Positions 843 through 62,050 of a stretch of DNA of 64,000 nucleotides are shown here, piece after piece. Positions within the stretch are counted from its first letter, which is position 1; each line of letters begins with the position of its first letter. Made by a program: the position numbers and the translations under genes. The DNA is taken from positions 186,001 to 250,000 of the IMG/VR virus record IMGVR_UViG_3300036944_001324; one strand, 5' to 3'. The notes beneath the pieces were generated by a model that saw only the letters and a list, made by a program, of their open reading frames with translations, ran no database searches and was not told the DNA's origin.

Positions 843-879
843 CATAAGCAAGGAGGGAAATCCCCTCCTTGCTCTTATG
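843..879 (+). terminator. hairpin flanked by CATAA/TTATG
   Basis: 11-bp stem agcaaggaggg/ccctccttgct. Confidence 0.65.
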
Positions 880-892
880 TCTGAAAGATAAA

Positions 893-1966
893 ATGAGCCA
901 ACAAGACAAACTCTTCCAAGTGCATTGCTTTGTTCAGCACATGGCAAACTTGACCATGGTCGGTTATACGAACGAAGAACGTATCGCGAAGTTACGTTTT
1001 AACTGGGGGTCAGGCGTTATTCGTGCGCTGTATCCCCCGCGCGTTTCAATCATCAAAGACATCAAACCGCGGGAAACCAAGACGTTTATCGAAACGTGGA
1101 AGATCGAAGACGAAGACTTTAACAAACGCCTTACGGAAGTGCTGTACGAGATTGGCGGCTGGCCAAAGTACGACATTTCTGGTGATTTGGTAGTAGATCC
1201 ACTCACTGAAAATGAAAAGGATCTCCTGTCGTGTTACTTGATGTCTTCACTCACATCAAGTAATGCGGAGATAACACTCCAGTACATCGAGGACATTGGG
1301 AAAATCATTAGCAAGACGCCTTTGACGTCTCAACAAATATCCAGCTATTGGGAAACTGGAATCCTCACTAGCGTCGCTGTGACTGTGTCCATCTTCAGCG
1401 ATAATCCATCGAAGCAGGTTGAAGATTTCGAAAAGAAATACAACATCAAAGCCGCTGCTATTGTTAGTCGTTTGGTTGAGATGATTACGAAACTCAATGG
1501 CTGGCCCGTGCGCGTCGATGGTAAGGTTACGGTGTTGAAATTGAGTCCGAAACAACGGCAAGTCTGTTACGAACATGCACGGCGATCGTCTACTATCATG
1601 TTCGATAAGATGATGGAGGGTCTCAACGAACTTTCGCAAACTGAAGTTCTGGACGATATCAGGGCAAACGATCTCTTGCTACGCAGTCGCCGAATTAGTA
1701 GCTGGATTTCAGACATCGGTGAAATGGAAATCCAGAAATACTTCGGTCCTGAAGTTCTGTTCGCAATTAAAGGGTATCAGCGTTCACTGGATGTGATGTA
1801 CAAAGTCATCGACGAAAGCAAAGATGGACCTGATCTCGAACTGATCAAACCCATCGTCAACAACGCGCGAAGTACGATGGCTACCGTCGTTAGTGTGGTG
1901 CTCAGTCGCCCTGCGTCCGCTGCTTTGAAAGTACGGATTAGTCAAGCGGCTGATCTTCTGCGATAA
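893..1966 (+). CDS. hypothetical protein
   Basis: Long ORF; ATG 893 preferred over TTG 869, which lies inside the upstream hairpin. Confidence 0.75.
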   Translation: MSQQDKLFQVHCFVQHMANLTMVGYTNEERIAKLRFNWGSGVIRALYPPRVSIIKDIKPRETKTFIETWKIEDEDFNKRLTEVLYEIGGWPKYDISGDLVVDPLTENEKDLLSCYLMSSLTSSNAEITLQYIEDIGKIISKTPLTSQQISSYWETGILTSVAVTVSIFSDNPSKQVEDFEKKYNIKAAAIVSRLVEMITKLNGWPVRVDGKVTVLKLSPKQRQVCYEHARRSSTIMFDKMMEGLNELSQTEVLDDIRANDLLLRSRRISSWISDIGEMEIQKYFGPEVLFAIKGYQRSLDVMYKVIDESKDGPDLELIKPIVNNARSTMATVVSVVLSRPASAALKVRISQAADLLR

Positions 1967-1967
1967 A

Positions 1968-2008
1968 TAAACGAGGGAAGGCCAAAAACCTTCCCTCGTT
2001 ATGTCGTC
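1968..2008 (+). terminator. hairpin followed by TTATGTCG
   Basis: 12-bp stem aacgagggaagg/ccttccctcgtt. Confidence 0.65.
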
Positions 2009-2038
2009 TTTTTGTTTTTGAAAAATAAGGACAGTCAA

Positions 2039-2260
2039 ATGGTAAAGCGTTACGATGATCAGACGCCTCAATATCGAGACAGAGATCCTCAACAAACGGC
2101 TGAGTTATCGCAGAAGTTCCGTGAAGAACGTATTAAGCGTATCTGCGCTCAGTACAGCTGCTCGCAAGAAGATGCTATTCGTTTCATCGACTTGCGTGAA
2201 GAAGGCTATTCTGTTTACGAAGCATCGGTAAAGGCAGGTCTTGCTGACCCGCACTTTTAG
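2039..2260 (+). CDS. small hypothetical protein
   Basis: ATG 2039 with upstream AAGGA. Confidence 0.65.
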   Translation: MVKRYDDQTPQYRDRDPQQTAELSQKFREERIKRICAQYSCSQEDAIRFIDLREEGYSVYEASVKAGLADPHF

Positions 2261-2482: not shown

Positions 2483-4660
2483 ATGGCTGCCTCTATCAAG
2501 CTGACTGTAGCGTCCCACCACTACAAAGTCGAGCCACGAACTCAGGAAGCAAAGGAAATGCTTTTTGAGTTCACTCGCCGTTTCTTGAAAGTGGACTTTC
2601 AAGGTAACGTTAGATCTATTACCACGTTCGCGGCTGCTAACAAATCGCGGTCGTGGTTCAGATTTCACATCAACAGTCTCACTGAGTTTTACATGTTTGC
2701 GAGAAATCGCAACTACCTGAAAGAACAGATGGAGATTGTGGTTCGGCCTTACATCGAACTAGCCAAGGTCGACCTTCCTGTAAAAGAACACTGGGAGGTT
2801 CGTGTTGATCAAGTACCGATTGTCGACTACCTGACCAAACCCATCGCTGTTGACGAACCCAAAGCCAAGCTAGTGGGACTTCAGACAGGCGGCGGTAAAG
2901 CGATACCGAACGATACGCTCGTTAAAACACCTGATGGTTGGGTGGCTAACAAGGACCTCAAGGTAGGTGATACCATCGTTGCATGGGACGGCACGCACTC
3001 CAAAGTCACTGGTTTGTTCCCTCAGGGTCTGGTTGAAGTCTGCACTATGCGCTTTGACGATGGGCGAGAGCGCGTGTGCTCTTGGGATCACCTCTGGCGC
3101 GTTTACGTTAGCGAGTGTCCTATTCCTCAGGTATTGACGTCCAGGCAAATGGAAAGCCTTCTCTACAGCGGTAAAGGCCTGCGCATCGACTTGCACCTTG
3201 CCGCTACAGAAGAAGACAAAGCCGCTTTCGCAGAAGCCATCAAGGGTAAAGAAGACCCTCACTTGAGCTATCGTTATACCTTGAGACCCAAGTCTCAAGA
3301 AGAGCTGGAACGTCTGACCAAACTAGCCTGGGCTTGTGGCGCCAGAGCTAGCAGTGTCAAGCTTACTGACGAGAAGTTCTTGCTCTACGTTTTCACGAAC
3401 GATGACAGCTTCGCAGCCCGGACTATGTCTGTTGTTGCGATACGCCGCGGTGGTGGATCTAGGGAGATGCAGTGTATCTCCATCGATCATCCTGATCGAC
3501 TCTTCATCATCGAAGACTACATCGTCACTCACAACACGTTCACCGCCATCAAGTCGATCAGTGACATCGGGCACAAAGTAGCTGTCGTGCTCAAGCCAAA
3601 GTACATCGATAAATGGGTGGATGACTTCACCGATGAAACCAAGGGTATTTTGGACATCAGTGAAAAAGAGATCATGACGATCCAAGGTAGCGCAGAGCTC
3701 ATGGCTCTGACTAAACTGGTCGAGATCCCTGGGGCTTTGGACAAGTACAAGATCTTCATCTTCTCTAACCGAACGTTCGACAACTACCTCAAAGCTTACG
3801 AGTTGCTGGGCTCTGACATCACCGCCATGGGTTACATGGTCGAGCCTGACTACCTGTTCGAGCGCATGGGTGTGGGTATTCGCTTGATTGATGAGGTGCA
3901 TGAAGAGTTTCACGCCAACTTCCGGCAGGACTTGTACACACACGTTCACATGTCGATCAGCTTGTCTGCAACGCTGATATCGCGTGATCCTACGCTGATG
4001 CGGATGTATGAGACGGCTTATCCACAGGCAACGCGTTACAAAGCACCGCCTTTGGAGAGGTACACAACGAGTTACGGGGTGTATTACAACTCCAATCCGA
4101 ACTACCGCTTGAAAACTTCCGAGCGAGGTCAGTCCTCCTACAGCCACACGGCTTACGAGAGCTGTATCATGAACAATAAAACGTTCATGAAAGGCTACGG
4201 TGATATGATCAAACACTACCTTGATAAAGGGTTTGTTCAGAACTATGAACCTGGGCACAAAGCTATCGTGTTTGCGGCGACCATCGACATGTGTACCCGG
4301 CTTAAGGATCACTTGTCGGATGCTTACCCGCAGTTCTCTGTGCGGCGCTTTGTAACAGGCGATGATTACCATGCTGACTACCAAGCTCCCGATATTCGTG
4401 TAACGACAATCGGCAAGGGTGGTACGGGTTTGGACATCAAGAACCTCACAGATGCACACATGACTAACGCCTTGGATTCCATTCAGCAAAACATCCAAGC
4501 GTTCGGTCGTCTTCGCAACCTCCTTCCCAAAGAGACAAGGTTCTTTTGGTATACCAATCGACGTGTCCCTAAACACGTCAAGTACCATGCGAAGAAGATG
4601 CAATTGATGAAGGAAAGAGCGCTTAGCGTGTCCAACATCGACTACATGCCACAACTATAG
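2483..4660 (+). CDS. SF2 (DExH-box) DNA/RNA helicase, intein-containing; phiKZ gp75-like
   Basis: Walker A QTGGGK|T split by an intein; motif II LIDEVHE; motif III SLSAT; motif VI QAFGRLR. Position upstream of the RNAP beta' gene matches phiKZ-like synteny as I recall it. Confidence 0.9.
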   Translation: MAASIKLTVASHHYKVEPRTQEAKEMLFEFTRRFLKVDFQGNVRSITTFAAANKSRSWFRFHINSLTEFYMFARNRNYLKEQMEIVVRPYIELAKVDLPVKEHWEVRVDQVPIVDYLTKPIAVDEPKAKLVGLQTGGGKAIPNDTLVKTPDGWVANKDLKVGDTIVAWDGTHSKVTGLFPQGLVEVCTMRFDDGRERVCSWDHLWRVYVSECPIPQVLTSRQMESLLYSGKGLRIDLHLAATEEDKAAFAEAIKGKEDPHLSYRYTLRPKSQEELERLTKLAWACGARASSVKLTDEKFLLYVFTNDDSFAARTMSVVAIRRGGGSREMQCISIDHPDRLFIIEDYIVTHNTFTAIKSISDIGHKVAVVLKPKYIDKWVDDFTDETKGILDISEKEIMTIQGSAELMALTKLVEIPGALDKYKIFIFSNRTFDNYLKAYELLGSDITAMGYMVEPDYLFERMGVGIRLIDEVHEEFHANFRQDLYTHVHMSISLSATLISRDPTLMRMYETAYPQATRYKAPPLERYTTSYGVYYNSNPNYRLKTSERGQSSYSHTAYESCIMNNKTFMKGYGDMIKHYLDKGFVQNYEPGHKAIVFAATIDMCTRLKDHLSDAYPQFSVRRFVTGDDYHADYQAPDIRVTTIGKGGTGLDIKNLTDAHMTNALDSIQQNIQAFGRLRNLLPKETRFFWYTNRRVPKHVKYHAKKMQLMKERALSVSNIDYMPQL
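2900..3535 (+). mobile_element. class 3 intein (212 aa) with a degenerate homing-endonuclease remnant
   Basis: Starts AIPNDTLVKTPDGW (Ala1). Block B HLW, block F MQCISID, block G IVTHN followed by +1 Thr give the Trp-Cys-Thr triplet of class 3 inteins. Confidence 0.9.
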
Positions 4661-4717
4661 CACCACAATGCTTCTGTAAGGCATTTTAAGGGCCCTAGAA
4701 GGCCCTAAAATAACATA

Positions 4718-4790
4718 CGGCATAAATGCCCCACCCTATCAACCAAAGGCCCTTAAAAAGGCTTCTGGCGATAGGGTGGGGTATATGCTG
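4718..4790. terminator. bidirectional hairpin between convergent genes
   Basis: gccccaccctatc ... gatagggtggggt, flanked by cggcataaa and tatgctg. Confidence 0.7.
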
Positions 4791-4797
4791 TCTGTTT

Positions 4798-5262
4798 TTA
4801 TTTTGGTCTCGGTAGCTGGATACTGAGGCCATTCTTTCCAAGACCGGCATTTCTCAAGCTGGTTTGCTCATCTTGGAACCGCTCGATCTTTCGAGCTTCA
4901 CTGATCACCAACATGAACTCTCGCATCTCTCGGGGGAGATTCAAGAATTGTTCGACGCTAAGACCAGGATAGAACTCAGCCATGGAACTCTTGGTGTAGA
5001 GATCCAGGGCTGCAAAGAGTGGACCATTTCGACCGTACTCTTCCAGAGGACTCACCGCAATAGAAGACAACGGACGCATGACCATCGCGTTGCCTGCAGT
5101 CTGTAGACCGTAGTAAAGGTCAAAAAGCATATCCACAGCCACTCTCGTGGAATCTTCGTCATCGAACTTGGGCAGAGTGCGAAACGCATGTTCTACGAAA
5201 GCGTAGTCATCGATCGTTTTGCCATCTGCCTTGTACCGGATGCCAAAGTTGGGAGCGGCCAC
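4798..5262 (-). CDS. tail assembly chaperone-like downstream ORF (T4 gp51/lambda T-like); probably expressed as a -1 frameshift extension of 5271..6860
   Basis: C-terminal SVEQFLNLPREMREFML resembles chaperone T-type tails. GTG start has a weak RBS, and the frame is open back to a slippery site at 5316-5322. Confidence 0.6.
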   Translation of the reverse strand: MAAPNFGIRYKADGKTIDDYAFVEHAFRTLPKFDDEDSTRVAVDMLFDLYYGLQTAGNAMVMRPLSSIAVSPLEEYGRNGPLFAALDLYTKSSMAEFYPGLSVEQFLNLPREMREFMLVISEARKIERFQDEQTSLRNAGLGKNGLSIQLPRPK

Positions 5263-5270
5263 GTGGTTGC

Positions 5271-9723: not shown

Positions 9724-9737
9724 AGCATCCTATGCTC

Positions 9738-9766
9738 GAACCACCTATCGTACTGGTAGGTGGTTC
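9738..9766 (+). terminator. intrinsic terminator-like hairpin
   Basis: gaaccaccta/taggtggttc stem followed by ttt. Confidence 0.6.
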
Positions 9767-9808
9767 TTTCCATTCCTAGTTTTTTATTTTACATCAAGGA
9801 CAATTGTC

Positions 9809-10646: not shown

Positions 10647-10687
10647 CGGCATAAACGAGAGAAGGCTAAGGCCTTCTCTCTATGCTG
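10647..10687 (+). terminator. CATAA/TATG-flanked hairpin
   Basis: gagagaaggc-taag-gccttctctc. Confidence 0.7.
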
Positions 10688-16360: not shown

Positions 16361-16431
16361 AAAGGTCCTGTTCGAGAGAGCAGGACCTTTATGCCGCCTA
16401 AACGGCATAAAAGCAGGCCGTAGCCTGCCTT
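16361..16431. terminator. back-to-back hairpins terminating convergent genes
   Basis: aaaggtcctg/caggaccttt, then ttatgccg...cggcataa, then gcaggc/gcctgc. Confidence 0.7.
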
Positions 16432-18349: not shown

Positions 18350-18439
18350 GCAATCATAAATCCCCTTCTTGACCGTAATGGTGAGAAGGGGATTTATGTC
18401 GTCAACGTATAGCACCCCATCTAAAGAAAGACATCTGTC

Positions 18440-26416: not shown

Positions 26417-26426
26417 TTACACTAGC

Positions 26427-26466
26427 AGCATAAAACGAGGTGGGGAAACCCACCTCGTATGCCGTC
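26427..26466 (+). terminator. CATAA/TATGCCG-flanked hairpin
   Basis: acgaggtggg/cccacctcgt stem. Confidence 0.7.
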
Positions 26467-26552: not shown

Positions 26553-27839
26553 ATGACAAAAGTAGGACAAAAGAAAGCCGATAAGACTGAAGCGGTAACC
26601 AGTGCAGCAACTGGTCCAGAACTGACCACAGCAGCAACGCTGGGCAGTGAATTCAAAATGAGTGGTGCGAGCGTTACCAAGCATCTCGAAAATGCCAAGG
26701 TGCCAGTCGCATCTACCATGGTGTCCGGCAAGCGTAACTTTGTCTTCTACGACAAGGCCAAAGCCACAGCCGCTATCAAAGCACAGATCGCTGAGAAGGC
26801 CAGGATCGAAGCTGAGAAGGCACGGGCTAAGGAAGCTGCAAAACAGCGTACAGCTGAAAAGTCCGAGTCGAAGCCTGCAGAACAAACAGCAATAGCTGTT
26901 CCGGGTGACGTCAGCAGAATTGCGGCCAACGTTGGCGCTCTGCAGGATCTGGTAATGCTGCATCAGGACATCGCGACCAAGCAGTTCGATCTCCTGAACA
27001 TGAAGGCGGACCGCCTGGAAAAGAAGCAAGTCAACCTCGACAAGGACGTGTTGGCCGCTGCTGTGAAAACGGCAATGGGTGACGGTCTGGCAACTGTGAC
27101 TTCTGCTATTCGCCGTCAGCGCGAAGATGCTGACAAGGAGTTCAATGCTCAGCGTTTGGCTGTCGAGGCGCAGTTTGTGAAAGTCACCAGCCAGCTCGAT
27201 AACTTGCTTCAGCGGGTTTCGGCCTTGACAGATGTTGTTGGTGCGTTGGAAAACACCATCCTCGCCATTCACACAGCTCCGGAGCCACAAGCTCCTATTG
27301 CTGAGTCCAACAAGAGCGGGGAGGCGAATCAGGAACAACATTTTTTTCAAAGCGGCCAGGGCGACAAGCCAGAAGTACCAAAGGATCAAAACTCCTCGCA
27401 TAAAGACGCGGACGTTGTTCCTGCAGGTTCTGGTAAAGCTCGGCGCCAACTTGAACAGGTCCTACGTGATGGACAGTTCGGCAAAGGCACAGACGCGATT
27501 AGTGGCGATTATCAAAAATCACCAAGCGATGAAAAAGCTGTTACGGATGCCGGACCAAAGCCTCGAGTCCTGATCTTGGGTCTGCACGACAATAAGGTCC
27601 GTCATATCGCTAGCTTTAAAAGCAAGCTCGATATGACGATTTTCAACCCTGATGAAGCAACCACTCGGATGGGTAAGACACCTCCAAAGGCGGACTACAT
27701 TATCCAGATGATCGATTACATCTCTCACACCGTCAGCAACAAAGTTGACGCTGGATTGGAGAGCATTCTGATCAGTGGTGGATTGTCGACGCTGCGTCGT
27801 GAGCTCAACAAGATCGTGAAAAAGCACCAGCCGGCATAA
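26553..27839 (+). CDS. coiled-coil protein with a C-terminal DUF2325-like alpha/beta domain
   Basis: AAGGA RBS; Ala/Glu/Lys-rich coiled coil; C-terminal RVLILG...ADYII...YISH...GGLS.L motif. Confidence 0.6.
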   Translation: MTKVGQKKADKTEAVTSAATGPELTTAATLGSEFKMSGASVTKHLENAKVPVASTMVSGKRNFVFYDKAKATAAIKAQIAEKARIEAEKARAKEAAKQRTAEKSESKPAEQTAIAVPGDVSRIAANVGALQDLVMLHQDIATKQFDLLNMKADRLEKKQVNLDKDVLAAAVKTAMGDGLATVTSAIRRQREDADKEFNAQRLAVEAQFVKVTSQLDNLLQRVSALTDVVGALENTILAIHTAPEPQAPIAESNKSGEANQEQHFFQSGQGDKPEVPKDQNSSHKDADVVPAGSGKARRQLEQVLRDGQFGKGTDAISGDYQKSPSDEKAVTDAGPKPRVLILGLHDNKVRHIASFKSKLDMTIFNPDEATTRMGKTPPKADYIIQMIDYISHTVSNKVDAGLESILISGGLSTLRRELNKIVKKHQPA

Positions 27840-27874
27840 AAGGTAGCTAGGGAAGCTTTTGCTTCCCTAGCCTT
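27832..27874 (+). terminator. hairpin after CGGCATAA
   Basis: gctagggaagc/gcttccctagc stem. Confidence 0.7.
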
Positions 27875-30133: not shown

Positions 30134-30204
30134 GGGTCAGCTTTGACGCCATACAGGAGGACCTTTCGGGGTCCTCCTTTTATGTCGATTCTATTTTTTC
30201 TTGG
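30134..30204 (+). repeat. 71-bp direct repeat, copy 1 (hairpin plus TTATGTCG plus T-tract)
   Basis: 67/71 identical to 31673..31743. Confidence 0.9.
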
Positions 30205-30307
30205 TCACATATGCTTTCTGGGAGATAGAGAGAAAAAATCTTTAAAGCATAGTTGAGTGTTGGTCGCATCAACTGTGTTCCCCTTTCACAGACTACAGGA
30301 GACAGTC

Positions 30308-31672: not shown

Positions 31673-31743
31673 GGGTCAGCTTTGACATCATATAGGAGGA
31701 CCCTTCGGGGTCCTCCTTTTATGTCGATTCTATTTTTTCTTGG
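31673..31743 (+). repeat. 71-bp direct repeat, copy 2
   Basis: 67/71 identical to 30134..30204. Confidence 0.9.
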
Positions 31744-31823
31744 CGATATATACCAGTTGTGAGATACAGGAAGAGTGGTTCTTCCTGGTCTCTTTGTTCA
31801 AACCCTTAAGGAGTATCCTCATC

Positions 31824-33481: not shown

Positions 33482-33633
33482 TAAAAGAATATCACCAAGA
33501 GGGTAGCACCTCTTGGTTTTATGCCGTCTATTTCTTTTTTGGTTTGCTATCAGCATCCAAGCCCTATTTAGATCAAGTTTTTTCAGTGATATATCATCGT
33601 TAGGATAGGTACCCACTATTGAAAGATCAATCA

Positions 33634-34917: not shown

Positions 34918-34950
34918 CGGCATAAGAGCCTTGCACGACGCAAGGCTCTG
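34918..34950 (+). terminator. hairpin after CGGCATAA
   Basis: agagccttgc/gcaaggctct stem. Confidence 0.7.
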
Positions 34951-40496: not shown

Positions 40497-40565
40497 CCTA
40501 AAGCAATCAGGAGAGGCTATCTGCGGCCTCTCCTTTTATGCCGACTACAAAGAAAGGCTAACGCC

Positions 40566-47482: not shown

Positions 47483-47521
47483 CGACATAAAGAGCCTCCC
47501 TTTTGGGAGGCTCTTATGCTG
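47483..47521. terminator. bidirectional hairpin flanked by CATAA/TTATG
   Basis: agagcctccc-tttt-gggaggctct between convergent genes. Confidence 0.8.
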
Positions 47522-53680: not shown

Positions 53681-53710
53681 TTTTCAGCAATACATTATCT
53701 ATAGGACGAA

Positions 53711-53753
53711 AGCATAAGAAGCCCAGGCTTTGCGGCCTGGGCTCTATGCCGTC
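53711..53753 (+). terminator. CATAA/TATGCCG-flanked hairpin
   Basis: agcccaggc/gcctgggct stem; no U-tract. Confidence 0.55.
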
Positions 53754-53780
53754 TTGTCAATCAAAGCGAAAGAAAGTAAC

Positions 53781-54308: not shown

Positions 54309-54720
54309 TGCCTCCGTTCTCGTTCTGATGGAGTGCGACACTCCACACTTCAAAGGACTGATGCTCTATCCGTTGCCGTTCCTCGGTGAGAACGATGATG
54401 ATGACGTCTGTAAGTTGGTAGCTGAACATCCAACTAAAAAAGTAGATGATTCACATAAAGGCGATCTCGACTATCACGTTATATTTAACCTGACGCCGTA
54501 TAGCGAGTCTGTTGCTCAACTGTTTATGGTGTTTGGTATTCGAACATCTACTGGATTGCTGGCCTTGGCCTGCAATAGCAACGTTCACGATTACATCGTT
54601 CAAAACGCCGGTATTGCAGATTACAAAGTCCTGCCAGCTACTGACCAAATTCACGGTATATTCGATACCATCGATCCGCTGAAGATCGCCAAGTTCGCGT
54701 CGATAATCCGAACAGTCTGA
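54280..54720 (+). CDS. hypothetical protein
   Basis: AAGGA RBS before ATG 54280. Confidence 0.7.
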   Translation: MNFSVKKLNDASVLVLMECDTPHFKGLMLYPLPFLGENDDDDVCKLVAEHPTKKVDDSHKGDLDYHVIFNLTPYSESVAQLFMVFGIRTSTGLLALACNSNVHDYIVQNAGIADYKVLPATDQIHGIFDTIDPLKIAKFASIIRTV

Positions 54721-54754
54721 TCATCCGCATAACCAATGAAAAAGAGAGATTAAC

Positions 54755-55411
54755 ATGCCCTTCGAATTGACTTTCGTGTTGCCAAAGATCGCTTTGTTTT
54801 ACAGTGGGGTCACGGTGTATCATACCTACATTGGGAACATGTTGCGAGGTGGGGAATCTTCCCGGATGTTCACTCTGCACCCCAAAAACCATAAGCACAA
54901 GTTCTCTGCCGTGGTGAATTCCAGCCAGATAGGTAAAGACCCCATCACTTGCATCAAGGAGATGATCGATTACGGTATCGAGACCTATACCACATTCGAT
55001 ACCGAAAGCGGTGAGTACCTCATCTATCGCACTTACGAAGTGCTGGTGGCTAACGATCAGTTGCTCGGCAAATTCTTCTCGAGTATGCATCGCAATTTCT
55101 ACCATCGAAAAGACTCCAACATCTCTAACATGGCTCAGGAAATCATGGATGACAATGAAATGTCGGACATGCTGCGCCAGCTCGGCGGCTTGTACGGCCT
55201 GAAGGACAAAAGCATCGAGGAGATCCTGCAGTTCCTCGCAAGGAACCGAATTGTGCATTTGCTGTTGCTGATGTATTACGACAGCGGAGCCAGCGTTGTC
55301 GACATTTGCGCTAAGTTCGACTTGGAGCATTACGACAAAGCGCAAACCGTTATCGACGCATGGCGAGTTCTTATGCAGGTTCTCGAAAAGCTTGCTGGGA
55401 GTACCGAATGA
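54755..55411 (+). CDS. hypothetical protein
   Basis: Packed ORF. Confidence 0.7.
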   Translation: MPFELTFVLPKIALFYSGVTVYHTYIGNMLRGGESSRMFTLHPKNHKHKFSAVVNSSQIGKDPITCIKEMIDYGIETYTTFDTESGEYLIYRTYEVLVANDQLLGKFFSSMHRNFYHRKDSNISNMAQEIMDDNEMSDMLRQLGGLYGLKDKSIEEILQFLARNRIVHLLLLMYYDSGASVVDICAKFDLEHYDKAQTVIDAWRVLMQVLEKLAGSTE

Positions 55412-55983
55412 CCACACAGTCGAAGATGCTGCAAGCCGGCAAGAACATGGCTTTCCTGTGTAAGAAAGACCTTGTACGCATCTACTTGCCGTTGATGGTT
55501 AACATCCATTCCTGGAAAGTAGGTGAGTCTTGGAAAAGGACCGCCCTTACCACATGCACGAGCCAACTCATTGATGAGTTTGGAATGGAGTTGATGATGA
55601 TTGCTGAGCAGTGTGGATGGAAGAATTGGCATCAAGCCGATTTTGTCCATTATCTGACAAGTGGTGATCTCGGTTGGTACATCGCTAGTTGGATACTGGA
55701 AACCTCTCCAGCGGTCAGTCGTTTTGATTACGAAGATAACCAGCTCGTATGCTACAGCAAACATTATCAGATAGATACACGGTCTGAGGAGTATGGTCTT
55801 GGATCATTTCAGTTTGCCTGTGCCGTCTACGCAGGCATGTTTGCTGACAACCTCAAAAACAAGGAGGCTCAAAAAGCCAAGTTGTTCGGCGGTGGTCACA
55901 CACACTACATGAAGCTTTGGCCGGGTATGTCACAGCGCAACATTTTGGAAGAAATGACTAACGCTACTCCAACGCTGATTTGA
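55408..55983 (+). CDS. hypothetical protein
   Basis: GGGAG RBS; ATGA overlap. Confidence 0.7.
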   Translation: MTTQSKMLQAGKNMAFLCKKDLVRIYLPLMVNIHSWKVGESWKRTALTTCTSQLIDEFGMELMMIAEQCGWKNWHQADFVHYLTSGDLGWYIASWILETSPAVSRFDYEDNQLVCYSKHYQIDTRSEEYGLGSFQFACAVYAGMFADNLKNKEAQKAKLFGGGHTHYMKLWPGMSQRNILEEMTNATPTLI

Positions 55984-56057
55984 CATTCATTCATCATAAA
56001 AGGCAAGGGTTCATTCCCTTGCCTTATGTCGTTTAATCTACCATCGAAAGAATTACC

Positions 56058-56921
56058 ATGTCCACGTTACACGCCGAAATGAGTTACGCACTCACAACAG
56101 CTTCAGTAGCTCTTGATGATTTTACCGGTGCCGGAGGTAATTATCAAAACTACATATCGGCTCTTAAAGAAGTAGAGCGTCTGATTCGGCTTGAGATGCA
56201 AACATCAAGGTTTATTTCAGAAAACGCTACTCTGAAAAATACAGAATCTCTTTGTAGTGAGTTGGAACTCACTACAGAACAAAAGGGGATTTTGTGGACA
56301 GCCATGAAATCCAATTACGTTCAATTGGAAAAGGATGGTGTCTTTTGGAACATCGACGGTGTTGATGTTGTTATGGGAACGTTGACGCTGACACCTTTGT
56401 ACGGCGTCGGTGGCGATGTGGTGAAACCATTCACGTTCAGTGTTGCGAGCATGAGCGTTCCAAACATGACTTTCTGCGCCATTGTTAAGTTTGAAGTGGG
56501 TGGAACTCCCAACGGACTGATACACCTGGTAGATCGGCTCGAGATGCTTGATAACAATCTGAAGAAGATCTACGAGCACGCGCGCGTTGTGCAAAACGAC
56601 CCCGTCAATACGGAAGTCTGTGAACTTTTCAAAGAAACTCTTGCGGCTATTCCTCGTGTGTTGACCGGGCCGACTGACGGTACCAACCACGCCATTCGTA
56701 TCTGGTACAACGAGCAAGGTTGGAACGATAATTTCGTCATGCAACTTTTTAACTATTGCGGGAAATGCAGTGGCTGGAGCAGCATGATTGAAGATCACAT
56801 GCGGGGAGGGCGTGTTTACAACATGGCAGAATTGTGTCGTCAAGAGCTCCGGCAAATCCTGAGCATGATGAAAGAACGAGTTGAACAACTGGCAAAGGAA
56901 CACAACCATGACCACCTCTGA
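56058..56921 (+). CDS. hypothetical protein with the shared W.xI..VD beta module
   Basis: SNYVQL...FWNIDGVD....LTL.P. Confidence 0.7.
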   Translation: MSTLHAEMSYALTTASVALDDFTGAGGNYQNYISALKEVERLIRLEMQTSRFISENATLKNTESLCSELELTTEQKGILWTAMKSNYVQLEKDGVFWNIDGVDVVMGTLTLTPLYGVGGDVVKPFTFSVASMSVPNMTFCAIVKFEVGGTPNGLIHLVDRLEMLDNNLKKIYEHARVVQNDPVNTEVCELFKETLAAIPRVLTGPTDGTNHAIRIWYNEQGWNDNFVMQLFNYCGKCSGWSSMIEDHMRGGRVYNMAELCRQELRQILSMMKERVEQLAKEHNHDHL

Positions 56922-57351
56922 AACCAAACAAAACCCGATCACCACTCTGGCCGCAGCCTGCACTGCATTCAAAAATGCAGTTCTTACATATGACCTCTCT
57001 ATGGTAGACGGCGGTAACGTCCAAGGTGCCATCAGTGGCGTTATTGGACATGCTGAGAATGTTCGTCATGCTGCTGATACTCTTTGCGCTGAATTCGAGC
57101 GTAATGACAATCCGACGACAGATGACGTCTTTCAGGCAGCCAACAATGCTGCGTTCATTCGTACCAAAGACGGTGAACCTTGGTTGCGCATTGACGCCGT
57201 TGACGGTGGTGTGGATGGTGATGTGGTGTATCCACTCACCATCTTGGCCCACGATGAGAACACCGAAGCAGGAGGTGCGCAGCGCTTGTTGATCGACGAG
57301 ATCGATCCCAAGGCGGTGAGCTTCCAGCGCCTCGTGGAATTCAAACTCTAA
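56908..57351 (+). CDS. hypothetical protein with the shared beta module
   Basis: AAFIRT...PWLRIDAVD...LTILAHD. Confidence 0.7.
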   Translation: MTTSETKQNPITTLAAACTAFKNAVLTYDLSMVDGGNVQGAISGVIGHAENVRHAADTLCAEFERNDNPTTDDVFQAANNAAFIRTKDGEPWLRIDAVDGGVDGDVVYPLTILAHDENTEAGGAQRLLIDEIDPKAVSFQRLVEFKL

Positions 57352-57366
57352 CAACTGGGTAAAACA

Positions 57367-57768
57367 ATGAGTGAACAAACAGCGCAAATGAGAGCTTTTA
57401 GTGAGCTTCTGCCGGTTGTGAATGAAACGATAGAACAGTTTCGCTACCGCGGTGTGATTGCACCCAAATACAAGGTTGTTATTAACGACCTTATTGTCTT
57501 CATGGAAGCAGCAGTTGTCCTGGATGAAACTGGGCTCGGGCTGAACACCCATGCAAGCTCTAAACGTTTCACAGAACTGGGACTGAAAGAGTCATTCTTG
57601 CGGTTCTACTGGGAGGCATTGCAGTTCTTCACCAACTGGAAGTACTCTCGCGAGCGCGGTGTGTTGGTGACTGAAGAAGAAACTGAATCGCAAATGCGAC
57701 TGGCTTTCGTCTACCTGAACCACATCGTCAGTGTGTTGGGTGAAATCCCATCTATCCGTCCTGCTTAA
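57367..57768 (+). CDS. hypothetical protein
   Basis: Packed ORF. Confidence 0.7.
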   Translation: MSEQTAQMRAFSELLPVVNETIEQFRYRGVIAPKYKVVINDLIVFMEAAVVLDETGLGLNTHASSKRFTELGLKESFLRFYWEALQFFTNWKYSRERGVLVTEEETESQMRLAFVYLNHIVSVLGEIPSIRPA

Positions 57769-57846
57769 AAGCAGAAAATCATTCATCATTACTTACGCAT
57801 GCAATTGTTTCAATTGCATGCGTTTATAATCAACGTAAAGAAAATC

Positions 57847-58500
57847 ATGGCACAAATTCGCATGTCTCCTGAAAATGTTAAACGTGTTCTAGCTACGGCC
57901 AAACTCGCCACGCATTGCCGATTGAGTAATGACCCGATGTGGTACAAAATCGTTTCTGTGGATGACAAAGTTCACGGTGACATCCATCTGGCTCATCCTC
58001 TTGATCCCTCCAACCAAGCCACAAACATAATTTACGTGAAGATGAACACAGACCCGTCTCAGATCCTCTTTTGCAACATTGCAGAAGTTCCTCTGGTTGG
58101 TCCAGCACTTACACCAGCGCAAGAGCTTTTCCAAAAGCTCTTCGATCTCAAACAAGAGATGTTGGGAATTACCAAAAGCATTTCATCCATTAAACACCTC
58201 GACAAAGAGTCTTACAAAGAGTGCCTTTTTGGGATGTACCAGGCGTTGGCTGTGCCAACTAAGCGGATTGGTGTTACCGATAACAAGGCAGCCTACGACT
58301 GGTTTGTTTCTCAGGGTTGTTCTCTAACCACCACCGCTGTGGCCATTGCTTTGTGTGATGAAATCTATTCACACTGGCGAGCCATGGTTACAAAGACAAT
58401 GCTATTCCAAGTAAAACAATCTGGTTACGACGATTGGGAACGTCGATTCAAGCTGATAGACCTCATTATGGAAGATCTGAATAAGCCTCACACAGCATAA
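57847..58500 (+). CDS. hypothetical protein, tandem paralog of 58555..59208
   Basis: SP..VKRVLATAK.ATHC...W.KIVSVD...W..RFKLIDLIMEDL.K shared over the full length. Confidence 0.8.
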   Translation: MAQIRMSPENVKRVLATAKLATHCRLSNDPMWYKIVSVDDKVHGDIHLAHPLDPSNQATNIIYVKMNTDPSQILFCNIAEVPLVGPALTPAQELFQKLFDLKQEMLGITKSISSIKHLDKESYKECLFGMYQALAVPTKRIGVTDNKAAYDWFVSQGCSLTTTAVAIALCDEIYSHWRAMVTKTMLFQVKQSGYDDWERRFKLIDLIMEDLNKPHTA

Positions 58501-58554
58501 GAGCAGAGGGCGCAACGCCCTCTGCTTTACTGCGCAACTTATCCAAATAAAGTC

Positions 58555-59208
58555 ATGAATCAAACTGCCATCTCCCCCAAAGACGTAAAGCGTGTGCTGG
58601 CTACTGCTAAAGTAGCGACCCATTGCAAACCGGCCAACACTACTGTCTGGAACAAGATCGTTAGTGTTGATGAAGAGGACTACTTCATCTACCTTGCTGA
58701 CCCACTCGATCGGTCGAATCAAATCACTTCGTCTATTGAAGTGCGTTTGTTGTATGGTCCAGACCAGTTGGTGTTTGCAAACATTCAAGAAGTTGAATTA
58801 GTGACCCCGGACACCAAGCCCGGCGAAGTGTTGCTTTTTCAATTGCATGAAATCAAACGTGATATGAGCGCCATCATTACCAACGTGACTCGTTTCGATA
58901 AAGTGAAGCGCAAAGATTACCACGAATGTATTGATCGCTTGTACTACGCGTTGATGTCGACGGTAAAGGTCGGTGTTTTTGAGAAAGAGACTTACAGCTG
59001 GTTTCGAAGTCAGCGTTGCTCTTTCACGACTGCAAGTCTGGCTGTCTTGCTTTATAAAGAGACGAACACTCACCGAAATACGCTCTATAACAAGAACGTG
59101 AGCAATTACTCACTGCAGGAAGGGTTCAGCAACTGGGGCCGCTGGTTCAAGTTGATCGACCTAATCATGGAAGACTTGAAAAAGGCTTTCCCACTCACAC
59201 AACTGTAA
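58555..59208 (+). CDS. hypothetical protein, tandem paralog of 57847..58500
   Basis: Same shared motifs as 57847..58500. Confidence 0.8.
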   Translation: MNQTAISPKDVKRVLATAKVATHCKPANTTVWNKIVSVDEEDYFIYLADPLDRSNQITSSIEVRLLYGPDQLVFANIQEVELVTPDTKPGEVLLFQLHEIKRDMSAIITNVTRFDKVKRKDYHECIDRLYYALMSTVKVGVFEKETYSWFRSQRCSFTTASLAVLLYKETNTHRNTLYNKNVSNYSLQEGFSNWGRWFKLIDLIMEDLKKAFPLTQL

Positions 59209-59269
59209 GCATAAAAGCAAGGGGCGTAAAGCTCCTTGCTATGCCGTTAATCCATCGAAAGACTGTCAA

Positions 59270-59818
59270 ATGAAAATACCTGGACTCAAACACTACCAGT
59301 TCGACCCTGAGGTCGTCTGTGCGTATTACTTCTCGGCAGCCGCTCACGCTTCCGTCAAGCAAAAGCGCAACTACACAGGCGAGCCTTACATCGTCCATCC
59401 AGCCGGCGTGCTGGAGATACTGATGCAGGCATGCCCTGACAAGGTCACTAACGCGGTCGCTAAGGCCGCTTTGTTGCACGATACAACAGAAGATACCGGG
59501 GTGACTCCTGAATTGATTCTGCAGCTGTTTGGTCAACAGGTGCATGGTTTCGTGAAGTACCTGAGCAAGGCTACTACTTCCAGCTTCGGCAATCGTGCCG
59601 AACGCCAAGCTGTTGAAGTGGCACGTATGCATAAGGCGCCTGAAGAAGTGCAGAACGTCAAAGCCTCTGACCTCATCCACAACCGCCGCAGTATTGCGCT
59701 GCATGATCCAGGCTTCTTGCAAGTGTTCGACTACGAAGCTCACCAGTTGTTTGCTGCTATGCAGTTGGTGGATCGACGCTTGGTTGCACTGTGGGAGAAG
59801 GAAACATCCACCGAATAA
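59270..59818 (+). CDS. HD-domain small alarmone hydrolase-like protein (RelA/SpoT/Mesh1 family)
   Basis: AH..Q.R.YTGEPYI.HP, AALLHDT.EDT, VK.SD..HN. Confidence 0.88.
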   Translation: MKIPGLKHYQFDPEVVCAYYFSAAAHASVKQKRNYTGEPYIVHPAGVLEILMQACPDKVTNAVAKAALLHDTTEDTGVTPELILQLFGQQVHGFVKYLSKATTSSFGNRAERQAVEVARMHKAPEEVQNVKASDLIHNRRSIALHDPGFLQVFDYEAHQLFAAMQLVDRRLVALWEKETSTE

Positions 59819-59833
59819 CGGAGATACAAAACA

Positions 59834-60574
59834 ATGACTCATTCCCTCAAAGTACGTTGGGCTATTGCTGCGGCTATCGCTAAGGCGACTCACATTCGCA
59901 TAGACGACCAAAAGGAGTTGCGCATTACAAGCAACAGTTCCGACGGCACGAGCGTTACTGTCCAAGACCCCAATTACCCGGACAAGATCATCAAGATCGA
60001 TCTGGATAATCGCAGTCTTGACAGTCTGAAGTTCTGGACTATGACTCCTGTCGTCATTCCTAATAACGAGCCGCTGGTGGCCTACTACGAGCTCCTATGT
60101 TTTAATCTGGCCGTCGGGTTCTCCGACAAGCAAGGTATCGTGGAGCTTAAGGAATCTGTGTTTCAGGTTTGGGAAGACGACATCGAACTGCGCGGCATGC
60201 CCAAGAACGGTGCCAAGATACAGATGGCTTATCACGGCTTACCAGACAGTGTCTACTCCGCCAGCCACCAGATGCGCGACATCTTGGATGATCCCAACTT
60301 CTTGAAGCACAACCAAGCCTACGTGCTGACCATCTGCGTGTTCACAGTAGCCCGTGCATTGCGTGAGCTGCTGCGTAACAAGGGCTTTAATCTTTCCAAC
60401 CTCCATCCCGAGATGCCGCTCATCCTGGACATCCCCGCCGATTGGGAAGCCTGTCGCATCCACAACCTGTGGTGTGGGATCTCTGGTGCTGAGGAGAAAG
60501 TGGTCGAACGTGGTCAACTGTTCGAATCCAAAATGGAAAAAGTCGTGGAGGGGGTTGGGGGGAGGACTCTCTAA
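59834..60574 (+). CDS. hypothetical protein; N-terminus related to the 57847/58555 module
   Basis: AKATHIRI...RI......V.V.DP. Confidence 0.65.
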   Translation: MTHSLKVRWAIAAAIAKATHIRIDDQKELRITSNSSDGTSVTVQDPNYPDKIIKIDLDNRSLDSLKFWTMTPVVIPNNEPLVAYYELLCFNLAVGFSDKQGIVELKESVFQVWEDDIELRGMPKNGAKIQMAYHGLPDSVYSASHQMRDILDDPNFLKHNQAYVLTICVFTVARALRELLRNKGFNLSNLHPEMPLILDIPADWEACRIHNLWCGISGAEEKVVERGQLFESKMEKVVEGVGGRTL

Positions 60575-61328
60575 CGCTTCGCTAGTAACTGTCGCTTTTA
60601 CGTTACCACGTAAAAGCTCTTTCAATCTCTTAGATTTCTAATTGAGTTATGAACGTTAGTTCATGATTCTCTTAGGAACTTTGAGGTATCTACTCAGGGG
60701 TTCCTATACCCCTGAGAGTTCGTATAAGGCCTTATAAAGCCGACATAAAAGCAGGAGGGTACACTGACCCTCCTGCTGTAGGTAATAACGCCTTATACGA
60801 GCTTTACAGTAGAGACTCGTAGACGAAGTCTACAGTCTCATATCCAGCATGGACAAAAATGTCCATGCTCTCTTTATATCTTATGCGCAAGTCGTCGAGC
60901 TTTTTCGGCGACTGAGAGAGTACACGGAACATGGACAGCCCGCAGGGATGGACAGTGGAGAGTACGAACGAAGGAGCATACCAGGGAGAGAGCGTAAGCG
61001 ATCACACTGAGATACTTCGCCGGGTAGCTACGTATCTCAGATAAGGGGCGTTAGCCCCTTTTTTATTCTTATTCTTATTCTCCATATGATTGTTTACTTA
61101 GTAAACCTAATTAGACATTCGGTGGAGAATAATATCTATCCAGCGTTGGAGAGCTTATAAACGCTGTTACAATGACCCTTGTTTACAAGAGAATGACTAT
61201 TGGATCGACATTAAGTCGACAGATCGAGCAGGTGTGCTACGTTACACCTGCGCTGTAACCCTAGCCTAAGAGCTTGGAGAGCAGTAGATCAAAAAAGTTC
61301 TTATGTTCAACAAACGAGAGAGTCAAAC
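60575..61328. other. ORF-free, hairpin-dense non-coding region (structured RNA or DNA cis-element)
   Basis: At least 12 inverted repeats of 5-14 bp in about 750 bp, with a terminator-like hairpin plus T-tract at 61043-61064. Confidence 0.7.
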
Positions 61329-62003
61329 ATGACAAACAACCAACACGCCAACGCTGAGAAGATTGAAGTTCAAATTCAAGGTATTTATTTCATAGCGGGC
61401 TTGATCAAAGATCAGTGCCAGAAGCTGTACATGCAAGACCCTCAGGTGTTCTTGGATGACATGCCCACTACGTTCAGCGTATTGGATCTCCTGCAGACCG
61501 CTATGGATTCAGTGAGTAACAACCTGGATAGGTACTTCGGTCCTTATGCGGCGTTTAACGAGCCTCAGCTGACTGATATCGTTTTGGAAACAACTGAAGC
61601 GGTTAACCGCTGCCGCGCTGCGTTCATTGTGGACGAATACCCTGTGGACATGCTGGAGTACCGTGAAACGATGTTGTACAAGCTGCCGCACGTGTACGCT
61701 GGTTTGATAGGGTATGCTGAGCAGCTCAAGTACATGCTCGAAGCTGGTAAGGATCGGGGTCGTATTAGTCCTCGCAGTGTTTCTCGTGTAGTGTTCGATT
61801 TTTATCTGGATGCTATCTTCGAGAAGATCAAGACCAACACCCATGTGTTCATGCATGGTCGTTGGTGGAAGATTGAGAAGTGCGAGATCGATCCTACCGA
61901 TCGTAGCTTGTTTGAGTTGCATCTGGACTTCGATCCTTTGAAGAAGGTTGTGAGTTCTGCTCATAGCTTGCCTTTGATCTATAAGGCTGCTTTCAAGCGT
62001 TAA
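61329..62003 (+). CDS. hypothetical protein with a C-terminal shared beta module
   Basis: NTHVF..GRWWKIEKCE...LHL.FDP. Confidence 0.7.
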   Translation: MTNNQHANAEKIEVQIQGIYFIAGLIKDQCQKLYMQDPQVFLDDMPTTFSVLDLLQTAMDSVSNNLDRYFGPYAAFNEPQLTDIVLETTEAVNRCRAAFIVDEYPVDMLEYRETMLYKLPHVYAGLIGYAEQLKYMLEAGKDRGRISPRSVSRVVFDFYLDAIFEKIKTNTHVFMHGRWWKIEKCEIDPTDRSLFELHLDFDPLKKVVSSAHSLPLIYKAAFKR

Positions 62004-62009
62004 ACTGGT

Positions 62010-62050
62010 AGCCCTAGGGAGTTGGCGCTCCCTAGGGCTTTTATGCCGTC
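62010..62050 (+). terminator. hairpin followed by TTATGCCG
   Basis: agccctagggag/ctccctagggct stem. Confidence 0.75.

What the first reader, a model, noticed from the sequence alone, without database searches (positions are those of the whole stretch)
843..62050. Genome-wide intergenic element: variable hairpin framed by a conserved CATAA ... TTATG(C/T)CG inverted pair
Seen: about 18 intergenic hairpins with unrelated stems carry (C/A)G(G/A)CATAA on the 5' side and/or (T)TATG(C/T)(C/T)G on the 3' side. Sites include 843, 1968, 4718, 10647, 16361-16431, 18355, 26427, 27832, 30155, 31694, 33494, 34918, 40509, 47483, 53711, 55995, 58494, 59208, 60741 and 62010. Several lack the U-tract of a normal intrinsic terminator (53711, 10647, 26427). 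Known: phiKZ late promoters have a short TATG consensus read by the non-virion RNAP. Inferred: a phage-RNAP-specific punctuation signal (terminator plus promoter, RNA processing site, or mRNA handling/export mark) rather than a host-type terminator.
Basis: partly seen in the sequence, partly recalled or inferred. Interest (0 to 1): 0.6.

Follow-up and report, generated by a model that had tools for sequence, protein, structure and literature searches.

The report
Jumbo-phage terminators with conserved TTATG box
The repeated hairpins framed by CATAA and TTATGYYG are real and are this uncultured phiKZ-like giant phage's version of a transcription terminator already mapped in phages phiKZ and 201phi2-1; its conserved tail contains the same TATG that the phage's own RNA polymerase reads at promoters.

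Summary
The window is part of a 271.7-kb metagenome-assembled phiKZ-like jumbo phage with a chimallin-like ORF and orthologs of phiKZ gp55, gp80 and gp123. (T)TTATG[CT][CT]GT[CT]T is the dominant intergenic word. It follows GC-rich hairpins with unrelated stems: 100 of 165 box copies do so, against 7-16% for permuted controls. It lies at gene 3' ends. It is dense in convergent gaps, at background in divergent gaps and nearly absent from coding hairpins.

The 5' CRRCATAA is the same box on the other strand. The two halves do not covary to pair, so they are sequence-specific boxes and not stem extensions. In four syntenic relatives (47-68% RNAP identity) the stems are replaced but the sense-strand 3' box stays.

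The same motif was published in 2024 as the conserved terminator of phiKZ (…YTTATKYYGT, 61 mapped 3' ends) and of 201phi2-1. I also found it in FLC9, RP12, LucasX and Eowyn, so this is a new member of a known kind.

Promoter, processing and export roles are untested. One open lead remains: the box contains the nvRNAP promoter core TATG, and this phage keeps 11 of 16 residues of the gp123 TATG pocket.

The parts
840..882 (+). Terminator element after gene 563-829. 5' CACCATA (1 mismatch), hairpin 847-873, 3' box TATGTCT (1 mismatch).
1968..2006 (+). Terminator element after gene 869-1966. Hairpin plus exact 3' box TATGTCG at 2000-2006, followed by a T-rich tract.
4718..4790 (.). Two-sided element between convergent genes 2483-4660 (+) and 4798-5262 (-). 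CGGCATA at 4718, long hairpin, TATGCTG at 4784. A further hairpin lies at 4685-4710. Orthologous elements with different stems occur in L001, L003 and L004.
10647..10687 (.). Element after gene 9809-10636. CGGCATA, hairpin, TATGCTG, no U-tract. All four relatives keep the 3' box at this position with unrelated stems.
16361..16396 (+). Terminator of + gene 15309-16355. Hairpin then TATGCCG at 16390.
16403..16431 (-). Terminator of the minus-strand BubE-like gene 16436-16825. Its box reads TATGCCG on the - strand (CGGCATA at 16403). It sits back to back with the previous element. The same layout occurs in L001 and L004.
18352..18401 (+). Element after gene 18017-18349. Partial 5' ATCATAAAT, hairpin, TATGTCG at 18395. 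Conserved in L001.
26426..26464 (.). Element after gene 26147-26416. CAGCATA, hairpin, TATGCCGTCT. A TTGGTCATATAT promoter-like word follows at 26493.
27832..27871 (-). Hairpin with the box on the - strand only (CGGCATA at 27832). The TAA inside the box is the stop codon of gene 26553-27839. The sense-strand tail is T-rich.
30147..30187 (+). Element after gene 29656-30132. Hairpin plus TATGTCG at 30181, then a T-rich tract and TTGGTCACATAT at 30201.
31686..31726 (+). Near-duplicate of the previous element, after gene 31094-31654. TATGTCG at 31720, TTGGCGATATAT at 31740.
33494..33526 (+). Element after gene 33197-33481. Hairpin plus TATGCCGTCT at 33520, no 5' box.
34918..34950 (-). CGGCATA plus hairpin. 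The sense 3' side reads TGTGTAT here but TATGTAT in the close relative L013, so this is a decayed two-sided element.
40509..40543 (+). Element after gene 40056-40496. Hairpin plus TATGCCG at 40537. Conserved in L013.
47483..47521 (.). Two-sided element between convergent genes 46280-47482 (+) and 47523-48869 (-). CGACATA, hairpin, TATGCTG.
53710..53751 (+). Element after gene 52733-53680. AAGCATA, hairpin, TATGCCGTCT, no U-tract.
55992..56031 (+). Element after gene 55408-55983. Hairpin plus TATGTCG at 56025, 33 nt before the next ATG.
58493..58530 (-). CAGCATA plus hairpin, with the box on the - strand only. The sense tail reads TTTACTGCG.
59207..59246 (+). Element after gene 58555-59208. Hairpin plus TATGCCG at 59240. 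A strain contig diverges exactly after 59246.
60741..60780 (-). CGACATA plus hairpin, with the box on the - strand only. It lies inside the 750-bp gene-free stretch 60575-61328.
62010..62048 (+). Element after gene 61329-62003. Hairpin plus TATGCCGTCT at 62042, no 5' box.

Best explanation
These are the factor-independent transcription terminators of a phiKZ-like (chimallin-encoding) jumbo phage that transcribes its genome with its own split multisubunit RNA polymerases.

Each unit is a GC-rich hairpin of arbitrary sequence followed, in the direction of transcription, by a conserved box (T)TTATG-Y-Y-G-T-Y-T. This box takes the place of the long U-tract of a bacterial terminator. The 5' CRRCATAA is the same box on the opposite strand. 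It makes the element work in both directions, as needed between convergent genes. Inside co-directional arrays it may also stop antisense transcripts or lengthen the stem.

What is shown: the anatomy, the statistics, the placement at gene 3' ends, the retention of the box while stems turn over, and identity with the motif at mapped 3' ends in phiKZ.

What is inferred: the weak UUUAU(G) hybrid together with sequence-specific contacts of the phage polymerase to TATG and the downstream YYGT slows the enzyme just as the hairpin forms, and the RNA is released.
For: 1. Enrichment and hairpin association.
2. Placement by type of intergenic gap:
- 30 boxes in 1.7 kb of convergent gaps.
- 50 sense and 31 antisense boxes in 24.4 kb of co-directional gaps.
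- 5 boxes in 5.2 kb of divergent gaps, which is about background.
3. Back-to-back hairpins with TATGCCG-N6-CGGCATA between them at convergent pairs. Each transcript therefore meets a hairpin and then a box. This layout is conserved in L001 and L004.
4. At the orthologous gap after the 275-aa gene, five genomes have five unrelated stems, yet all keep TATG[CT][CT]GT[CT]T on the sense strand. The 5' box is kept in only 2-3 of them.
5. The halves do not covary for pairing at the Y/R positions (7 Watson-Crick, 12 G-U and 7 A-C of 26), so the boxes are read as sequence.
6. In phiKZ, 61 terminators mapped by ONT-cappable-seq share ...YTTATKYYGT (PMC10914365). In 201phi2-1, motif A resembles it, and a co-occurring motif B lengthens the stem and goes with stronger termination in reporter assays (PMC11512511).
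7. I found the same hairpin plus TATG(Y/A)YG, often with a 5' CATAA, in phiKZ, FLC9, RP12, LucasX and Eowyn.
8. The genome has orthologs of phiKZ gp80, gp55 and gp123 and a chimallin-like ORF. Sigma70-type promoters are depleted.
Against: - There are no RNA data for this phage. It is known only from metagenomes, and no infection transcriptome exists. Termination here therefore rests on analogy with phiKZ and 201phi2-1.
- In co-directional arrays the antisense box is nearly as common as the sense box: 39 against 40 hairpins at one mismatch or fewer. A pure sense-strand terminator model does not predict this.
- 37 of 93 co-directional intergenic hairpins have no box at all, so it is not the only terminator type.
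- The mechanism by which the box acts is not established even in phiKZ.
Confidence: 0.8

Rival explanations
1. Stop-start punctuation. The box is both a terminator tail and an nvRNAP promoter core. The polymerase releases the RNA at the hairpin, and the still-open non-template TATG is caught by the beta-like subunit's pocket. A new transcript then begins at the G, giving mRNAs with a common 5' GYYGU. This does not exclude the terminator reading.
For: - The phiKZ late promoter is (-3)TATG(+1). It is necessary but not sufficient, and the main extra determinant lies downstream of +1 (PMC4666361).
- This phage's gp123 ortholog keeps 11 of 16 pocket residues at 28% overall identity.
- Many boxes lie 25-40 nt upstream of the next start codon, with no room for another promoter.
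- A hairpin-less CCTATGCY is conserved in five genomes upstream of one gene, so TATGYY also occurs where only a promoter makes sense.
Against: - The box is not enriched in divergent promoter-only gaps.
- Hairpin-less TATG is not enriched upstream of genes: 94 hairpin-less copies out of 150 in total, against about 140 copies expected from composition.
- The box is kept between convergent genes, where initiation would only give antisense RNA.
- Several boxes are followed by a separate promoter-like word, TTGGYSAYATAT.
- The phiKZ promoter P119L has no upstream hairpin.
- The published TSS and TTS tables could not be obtained to test whether they coincide.
Confidence: 0.25
2. RNA-level mark. The hairpin plus UAUGYYGU is a site for an RNase or an RNA-binding protein (processing, 3'-end protection, or handling and export of mRNA from the phage nucleus), and not the site where the polymerase stops.
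For: - The phage encodes a chimallin-like shell, so its mRNAs must leave a compartment.
- The box is conserved well past the point where a canonical terminator would release the RNA.
Against: - Nothing in the sequence points to a specific nuclease or binding protein.
- The ends in phiKZ were classed as intrinsic terminators, and 201phi2-1 terminators of this type worked in a host reporter without phage proteins.
- Conservation of bases downstream of the likely 3' end fits DNA contacts better than contacts to the released RNA.
Confidence: 0.1
3. DNA-level palindrome. The CATAA...TTATG pair is a binding site for a dimeric DNA-binding protein, or a recombination or module-exchange hotspot, and is unrelated to transcription.
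For: - Many elements are strand-symmetric.
- Strain mosaics break exactly at boxes.
Against: - The spacing between the half-sites varies from 25 to 59 bp, which no dimeric binder tolerates.
- Many elements have only one half.
- Placement follows gene ends and orientation.
- Breakpoints at boxes are equally explained by short shared homology between otherwise different cassettes.
Confidence: 0.04
4. Not a specific signal. The flanks are just A/T-rich stem extensions of ordinary terminators, or copies of a small mobile repeat.
For: CATAA and TTATG are complementary and extend the stem in 16 of 26 two-sided elements.
Against: - G, Y, Y, G and T after TTAT are conserved without pairing partners.
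- There is no covariation between the two halves.
- The box is kept across orthologs whose stems are unrelated.
- Permuted controls show 7-16% hairpin association against 61% for the box.
- The stems are unrelated to each other, so these are not copies of a mobile element.
Confidence: 0.01

Closest known systems
Conserved intrinsic terminator motif of Pseudomonas phage phiKZ (5'-BCCYCCCCHWWDGGGRRGGBYTTATKYYGT-3'; Putzeys et al. 2024, PMC10914365)
   Same: - GC-rich hairpin followed by TTAT-G/T-Y-Y-G-T.
- Located at gene 3' ends.
- Bidirectional forms between convergent genes.
- The genome is transcribed by split phage RNAPs.
- I confirmed the motif in phiKZ DNA itself, including partial 5' CATAA partners.
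   Different: - In phiKZ the stems themselves resemble each other (CCYCCCC...GGGRRGG). Here the stems are unrelated.
- The box here is more strictly TATG[CT][CT]GT[CT]T, and the 5' CGGCATAA partner is far more prominent.
- Here there is no transcript mapping.
- The phages are only about 28-33% identical in RNAP subunits.
Terminator motifs A and B of Pseudomonas phage 201phi2-1 (PMC11512511)
   Same: - One motif like that of phiKZ, plus a second, co-occurring motif that lengthens the hairpin.
- Two-motif terminators were stronger in vivo.
- 15 bidirectional terminators were found.
- This matches the two-box and one-box classes seen here.
   Different: The logos are not given as text, so I infer rather than show that motif B is the CATAA arm.
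phiKZ late (nvRNAP) promoter, (-3)TATG(+1) (PMC4666361, PMC7618050, PMC12809450)
   Same: - The same tetranucleotide.
- The pocket residues of gp123 that read it are largely kept in this phage.
   Different: - Late promoters need no hairpin (P119L has none).
- No conservation after +1 was reported for them, whereas the box here has conserved YYGT.
- The box follows gene ends, not gene starts.
Canonical bacterial intrinsic (Rho-independent) terminator
   Same: A GC-rich hairpin close to the stop codon, with a run of 1-4 T directly after the stem.
   Different: - There is no 7-9 nt U-tract. Instead there is a specific, G/C-containing box.
- Most elements fail a standard hairpin plus T-run scan on the sense strand.

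Membership tests
phiKZ-type boxed intrinsic terminator | GC-rich stem-loop of roughly 8-13 bp | tested here: met
   stems of 8-18 pairs, loops of 3-9 nt.
phiKZ-type boxed intrinsic terminator | Stem followed by YTTAT-K-Y-Y-G-T | tested here: met
   Position matrix of 100 sites, unbiased 6-mer enrichment and permutation control.
phiKZ-type boxed intrinsic terminator | Lies at gene 3' ends, with two oppositely oriented copies between convergent genes | tested here: met
phiKZ-type boxed intrinsic terminator | Transcript 3' ends map to it | not testable with these tools
   No RNA run of an infection exists. The holders are environmental metagenomes kept as contigs.
phiKZ-type boxed intrinsic terminator | Genome encodes phiKZ-type virion and non-virion multisubunit RNAPs | tested here: met
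   gp80 ortholog in the window at 8407-9723. gp123 and gp55 orthologs and a chimallin-like ORF elsewhere in the genome.
Canonical bacterial intrinsic terminator | U-tract: at least 5 T in the 8 nt after the stem | tested here: not met
   flags only a few elements on the sense strand. The typical tail TTTATGCC has 4 T.
phiKZ late promoter (TATG at -3..+1) | TATG present | tested here: met
   By definition of the box.
phiKZ late promoter (TATG at -3..+1) | Located upstream of genes irrespective of terminators, and enriched in promoter regions | tested here: not met
   Background density in divergent gaps. No excess of hairpin-less TATG upstream of genes.
phiKZ late promoter (TATG at -3..+1) | Primary 5' ends start at the G | not testable with these tools
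   No RNA data here. The published phiKZ TSS tables are not held.
REP/MITE-like dispersed repeat | Copies share their internal sequence | tested here: not met
   Stems are unrelated within the genome and between orthologous sites.
Neisseria-type DNA uptake sequence (ATGCCGTCTGAA) | Full core GCCGTCTGAA over-represented | tested here: not met
   0 copies on either strand. The shared ATGCCGTCT is a coincidence.

The most novel reading that the evidence does not exclude
The terminator box and the nvRNAP promoter core are one and the same signal, read by one pocket. The beta-like subunit (the gp123 ortholog) recognises non-template TATG(YYGT) not only to start transcription but also during elongation. 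There it pauses the enzyme at the foot of a hairpin and causes release. The open bubble left behind can be used at once to start the next mRNA. Jumbo-phage genomes would then be punctuated by stop-start gene junctions, somewhat like those of non-segmented negative-strand RNA viruses. This would also explain how a 4-bp promoter can be specific.
Probability: 0.2. Interest if true: 0.7.

Novelty: new member of a known kind. Interest (0 to 1): 0.35.

Why it matters
For annotation, the box gives a simple and specific way to mark operon ends in uncultured phiKZ-like phages, where standard terminator finders miss most sites.

For mechanism, the comparison adds three points that I did not find stated in the papers read:
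1. The box is shared by phages of Pseudomonas, Burkholderia, Ralstonia, Xanthomonas and Klebsiella, and by an uncultured lineage, even though their RNAP subunits are only about 30% identical.
2. The box persists while the hairpin stems are replaced, and it is read as sequence, not as pairing.
3. The box contains the TATG that the nvRNAP beta-like subunit binds at promoters. The pocket residues track the presence of the box in the seven genomes compared. Only one of those genomes lacks the box, so this is a lead and not a result.

If the polymerase's promoter pocket also drives termination, that would be a new termination mechanism for a multisubunit RNAP.

Tried and rejected
- Neisseria DNA uptake sequence. 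The box shares ATGCCGTCT with it, but the genome has no copy of GCCGTCTGAA. Rejected.
- Mobile repeat (REP or MITE). The stems are unrelated. Rejected.
- Stem extension only. There is no covariation between the halves. Rejected.
- Known RNA family. No Rfam hit at gathering score in the window.
- Close phage relatives. Nucleotide search of the phage collection found nothing. A large window protein gave one weak protein-level hit. IMG/VR found nothing. Relatives were reached only through the protein word search and contig look-ups.
- RNA evidence. The only holders are environmental metagenomes, and the 'RNA-Seq' wastewater runs are probably DNA and are kept as contigs. Nothing can be said about transcript ends. 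Among the 40 best-supported of 252 strain differences on 53600-59400, none falls inside the four elements, but the list is truncated, so I draw no conclusion from it.
- Published TSS and TTS tables of phiKZ and 201phi2-1. The supplements are not held, and Ceyssens et al. 2014 is not held. The test of whether TSS and TTS coincide could therefore not be run.
- Stand-alone promoter use of TATG or TATGYYG. No enrichment outside hairpin contexts.

Full report
**What the window is**

The window is bases 186001-250000 of a single 271,654-bp contig with 51% GC. The contig was assembled from an environmental metagenome and recurs in aquifer, wastewater and freshwater runs.

It is a phiKZ-like jumbo phage.
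- Window gene 8407-9723 is the ortholog of phiKZ gp80, a virion-RNAP subunit.
- Elsewhere the genome has orthologs of the non-virion RNAP subunits gp123 (E 2e-60) and gp55 (E 7e-66).
- The gp55 ortholog lies next to a 689-aa ORF with weak similarity to the nuclear-shell protein gp54, as in phiKZ.
- The nearest named phages are Burkholderia FLC9 and Ralstonia RP12/RP31, only about 36-37% identical in this subunit.
- Sigma70-type promoter matches are fewer than in shuffles: 10 against 19 ± 4.8.

Yes. All 21 listed sites have a stable hairpin and at least one box.

Without any prior motif, the most over-represented intergenic hexamers of the whole genome are all slices of TTTATGCCGTC and its complement, with z up to 17. 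TATGCCG is the second most over-represented heptamer genome-wide.

Of 165 copies of TATG[CT][CT]G on both strands, 100 sit directly after a strong hairpin. For the eleven other orderings of the same four letters the figure is 7-16%. Among hairpins of at least 8 bp, 53 of 112 intergenic ones carry a box, against 1 of 266 in coding sequence.

T-rich positions precede it (72% T at -1). After it come Y, Y, G, then T (74%), C/T, T (66%).

**Anatomy**

CGGCATAA is the reverse complement of TTATGCCG, so the '5' flank' is the same box on the other strand. I tested whether the two halves are merely an extension of the stem.

In 26 elements with both exact halves, the variable Y/R positions do not covary to keep pairing. 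There are 7 Watson-Crick, 12 G-U and 7 A-C combinations, and only 16 of 26 fold in register. Each half is therefore conserved as a sequence in its own right.

**Where the elements lie**

Using my own codon-usage gene calls, the box density is as follows.

| Gap type | Total length | Boxes |
|---|---|---|
| Convergent | 1.7 kb | 30 |
| Co-directional | 24.4 kb | 50 sense + 31 antisense |
| Divergent (promoters but no gene ends) | 5.2 kb | 5 (about chance) |

None of the four strong hairpins in divergent gaps has a box.

At the convergent pair 15309-16355 (+) and 16436-16825 (-), two different hairpins stand back to back with TATGCCG-N6-CGGCATA between them. Each transcript therefore meets its hairpin first and then the box. 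This is terminator logic. A promoter at that spot would only produce antisense RNA.

**Comparison with relatives**

Protein search and contig look-ups gave four syntenic contigs whose gp80 orthologs are 68, 62, 58 and 47% identical.

At the gap after the 275-aa gene (window 10647), five genomes have five unrelated stems. All keep TATG[CT][CT]GT[CT]T on the sense strand, while the 5' box is present in only two or three. The convergent back-to-back layout is also kept in two relatives with different stems.

So the hairpin sequence is free, the box is constrained, and the sense-strand box is the more constrained half. One '5'-only' element (34918) reads TGTGTAT on its 3' side, where an 84%-identical relative reads TATGTAT. 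At least some one-sided elements are therefore decayed two-sided ones.

**What is already known**

- Putzeys et al. 2024 mapped transcript ends in phiKZ by ONT-cappable-seq. They report that 61 intrinsic terminators share 5'-BCCYCCCCHWWDGGGRRGGBYTTATKYYGT-3', a stem-loop followed by a 'TTAT region', and they found six bidirectional terminator regions between convergent genes (PMC10914365). That tail is the box found here.
- The 201phi2-1 study found a very similar motif A (n=59). It also found a motif B that co-occurs with A, lengthens the hairpin and goes with stronger termination in a reporter assay, plus 15 bidirectional terminators (PMC11512511).
- I checked the DNA directly. phiKZ (100-150 kb) shows hairpin plus TATG[CT][CT]G with partial 5' (A)CATAA partners.
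- TATG is the first or second most common tetramer flanking strong hairpins in phiKZ, FLC9, RP12, LucasX and Eowyn, but not in Vibrio phage pVa-21, where T-rich tails dominate.

The element is thus a clade-wide, already described type of terminator. This phage is a new and rather clean example, with an especially prominent second box.

**How it probably works**

Shown here or in the literature: a hairpin followed by the box marks transcript ends in the model phages, and the box replaces a canonical U-tract. The standard hairpin plus T-run scan misses most elements on the sense strand.

Inferred: the short UUUAU(G) hybrid is weak, and the conserved G-Y-Y-G-T, part of which lies beyond the likely release point, suggests contacts of the polymerase with DNA rather than with the released RNA.

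A concrete candidate for such a contact exists. [quoted passage not shown]

| Phage | Pocket residues kept (of 16 named) | Overall identity to phiKZ gp123 |
|---|---|---|
| This phage | 11 | 28% |
| Four other box-bearing phages | 6-10 | 28-31% |
| pVa-21 (no box enrichment) | 4 | 24% |

S144, F151 and H331 are invariant, and Y406 is always aromatic. pVa-21 has lost H185, K158, S334 and Q466.

With a single negative genome this is a lead and not a test. One caution: a boxed terminator also ends the operon that contains the gp123 ortholog (genome 71515-71551). If that operon is early, as in phiKZ, the virion RNAP must respond to the box too.

**Promoter, processing or export?**

The box contains the phiKZ late-promoter core (-3)TATG(+1), which is necessary but not sufficient. 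The unexplained extra determinant lies downstream of +1 (PMC4666361). A stop-start arrangement, with termination at the hairpin and re-initiation at the G, is therefore conceivable.

In favour:
- Many boxes lie 25-40 nt before the next start codon.
- A hairpin-less CCTATGCY is conserved upstream of one gene in five genomes.

Against:
- No enrichment in divergent gaps.
- No excess of hairpin-less TATG upstream of genes.
- The box is retained between convergent genes.
- Several boxes are followed by a separate promoter-like word.

I rate stop-start as possible but unproven, at about 0.2-0.25. The published TSS and TTS tables that could settle it for phiKZ are not available here. For RNA processing or export there is no evidence either way.

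**The unexplained part**

Inside co-directional gene arrays the antisense box is almost as frequent as the sense box. Among 93 hairpins, at one mismatch or fewer, 23 have both boxes, 17 have the sense box only, 16 have the antisense box only and 37 have neither.

Three readings fit this: termination of antisense transcripts, a stem-lengthening role as for motif B of 201phi2-1, or decay of two-sided elements. I cannot separate them.

**Verdict**

The element is a phage-polymerase terminator of a kind already published for phiKZ and 201phi2-1, so novelty is 'new member of a known kind' and interest is moderate to low. The residual interest lies in the shared TATG between terminator box and promoter core, and in the conserved polymerase pocket.

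Noticed in passing
window 26493, 30201, 31740; genome 57155, 60115, 129033: Six + strand intergenic sites share a T-rich run, then TTGG(T/C)(C/G)A(T/C)ATAT, then about 8 nt, then GGGAGATA-like. Each lies just downstream of a boxed terminator. This is probably a separate promoter class, possibly early (virion-RNAP) promoters.
   Followed up: partly
window 9713-9819; L001 11295-11402; L003 11289-11432; L004 6599-6712; L005 11077-11173: Between the gp80-like gene and the next gene, a hairpin-less C(C/G)TATG(C/T)(C/T) is conserved in all five genomes and is followed by a variable hairpin. It is a candidate TATG-type promoter with a 5'-UTR hairpin or attenuator.
   Followed up: no
window 56940-57837 and 59246: Contigs from other metagenomes replace 56940-57837 with other sequence that enters through another hairpin arm plus TATGTCG. 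One contig diverges exactly after the last G of the box at 59246. Gene-cassette swaps between strains seem to be bounded by the terminator boxes.
   Followed up: no
window 60575-61328: A 750-bp stretch has no called gene but many hairpins, one of them boxed. No Rfam family matches. It could hold a small RNA or a replication or packaging feature.
   Followed up: no
window 30147-30260 and 31686-31800: Two nearly identical terminator-plus-promoter-like modules lie 1.5 kb apart (same stem AGGAGGACC..GGTCCTCCT, same tail). This suggests a local duplication of the regulatory cassette.
   Followed up: no
window 27832-27839: The TAA inside the box CGGCATAA serves as the stop codon of gene 26553-27839.
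   Followed up: no
genome 16177-16229, 146850-146900, 163490-163540, 179680-179711, 141847-141875, 270355-270397: Several terminators in different places share the stem word CCTACCC/GGGTAGG, which also shows up among enriched intergenic hexamers. A subfamily of related stems therefore exists among otherwise unrelated ones.
   Followed up: no
window 16436-16825 (-): The minus-strand gene matches Pfam BubE (PF20137) in the relatives' annotation. It is one of the few reverse-strand genes in this block.
   Followed up: no
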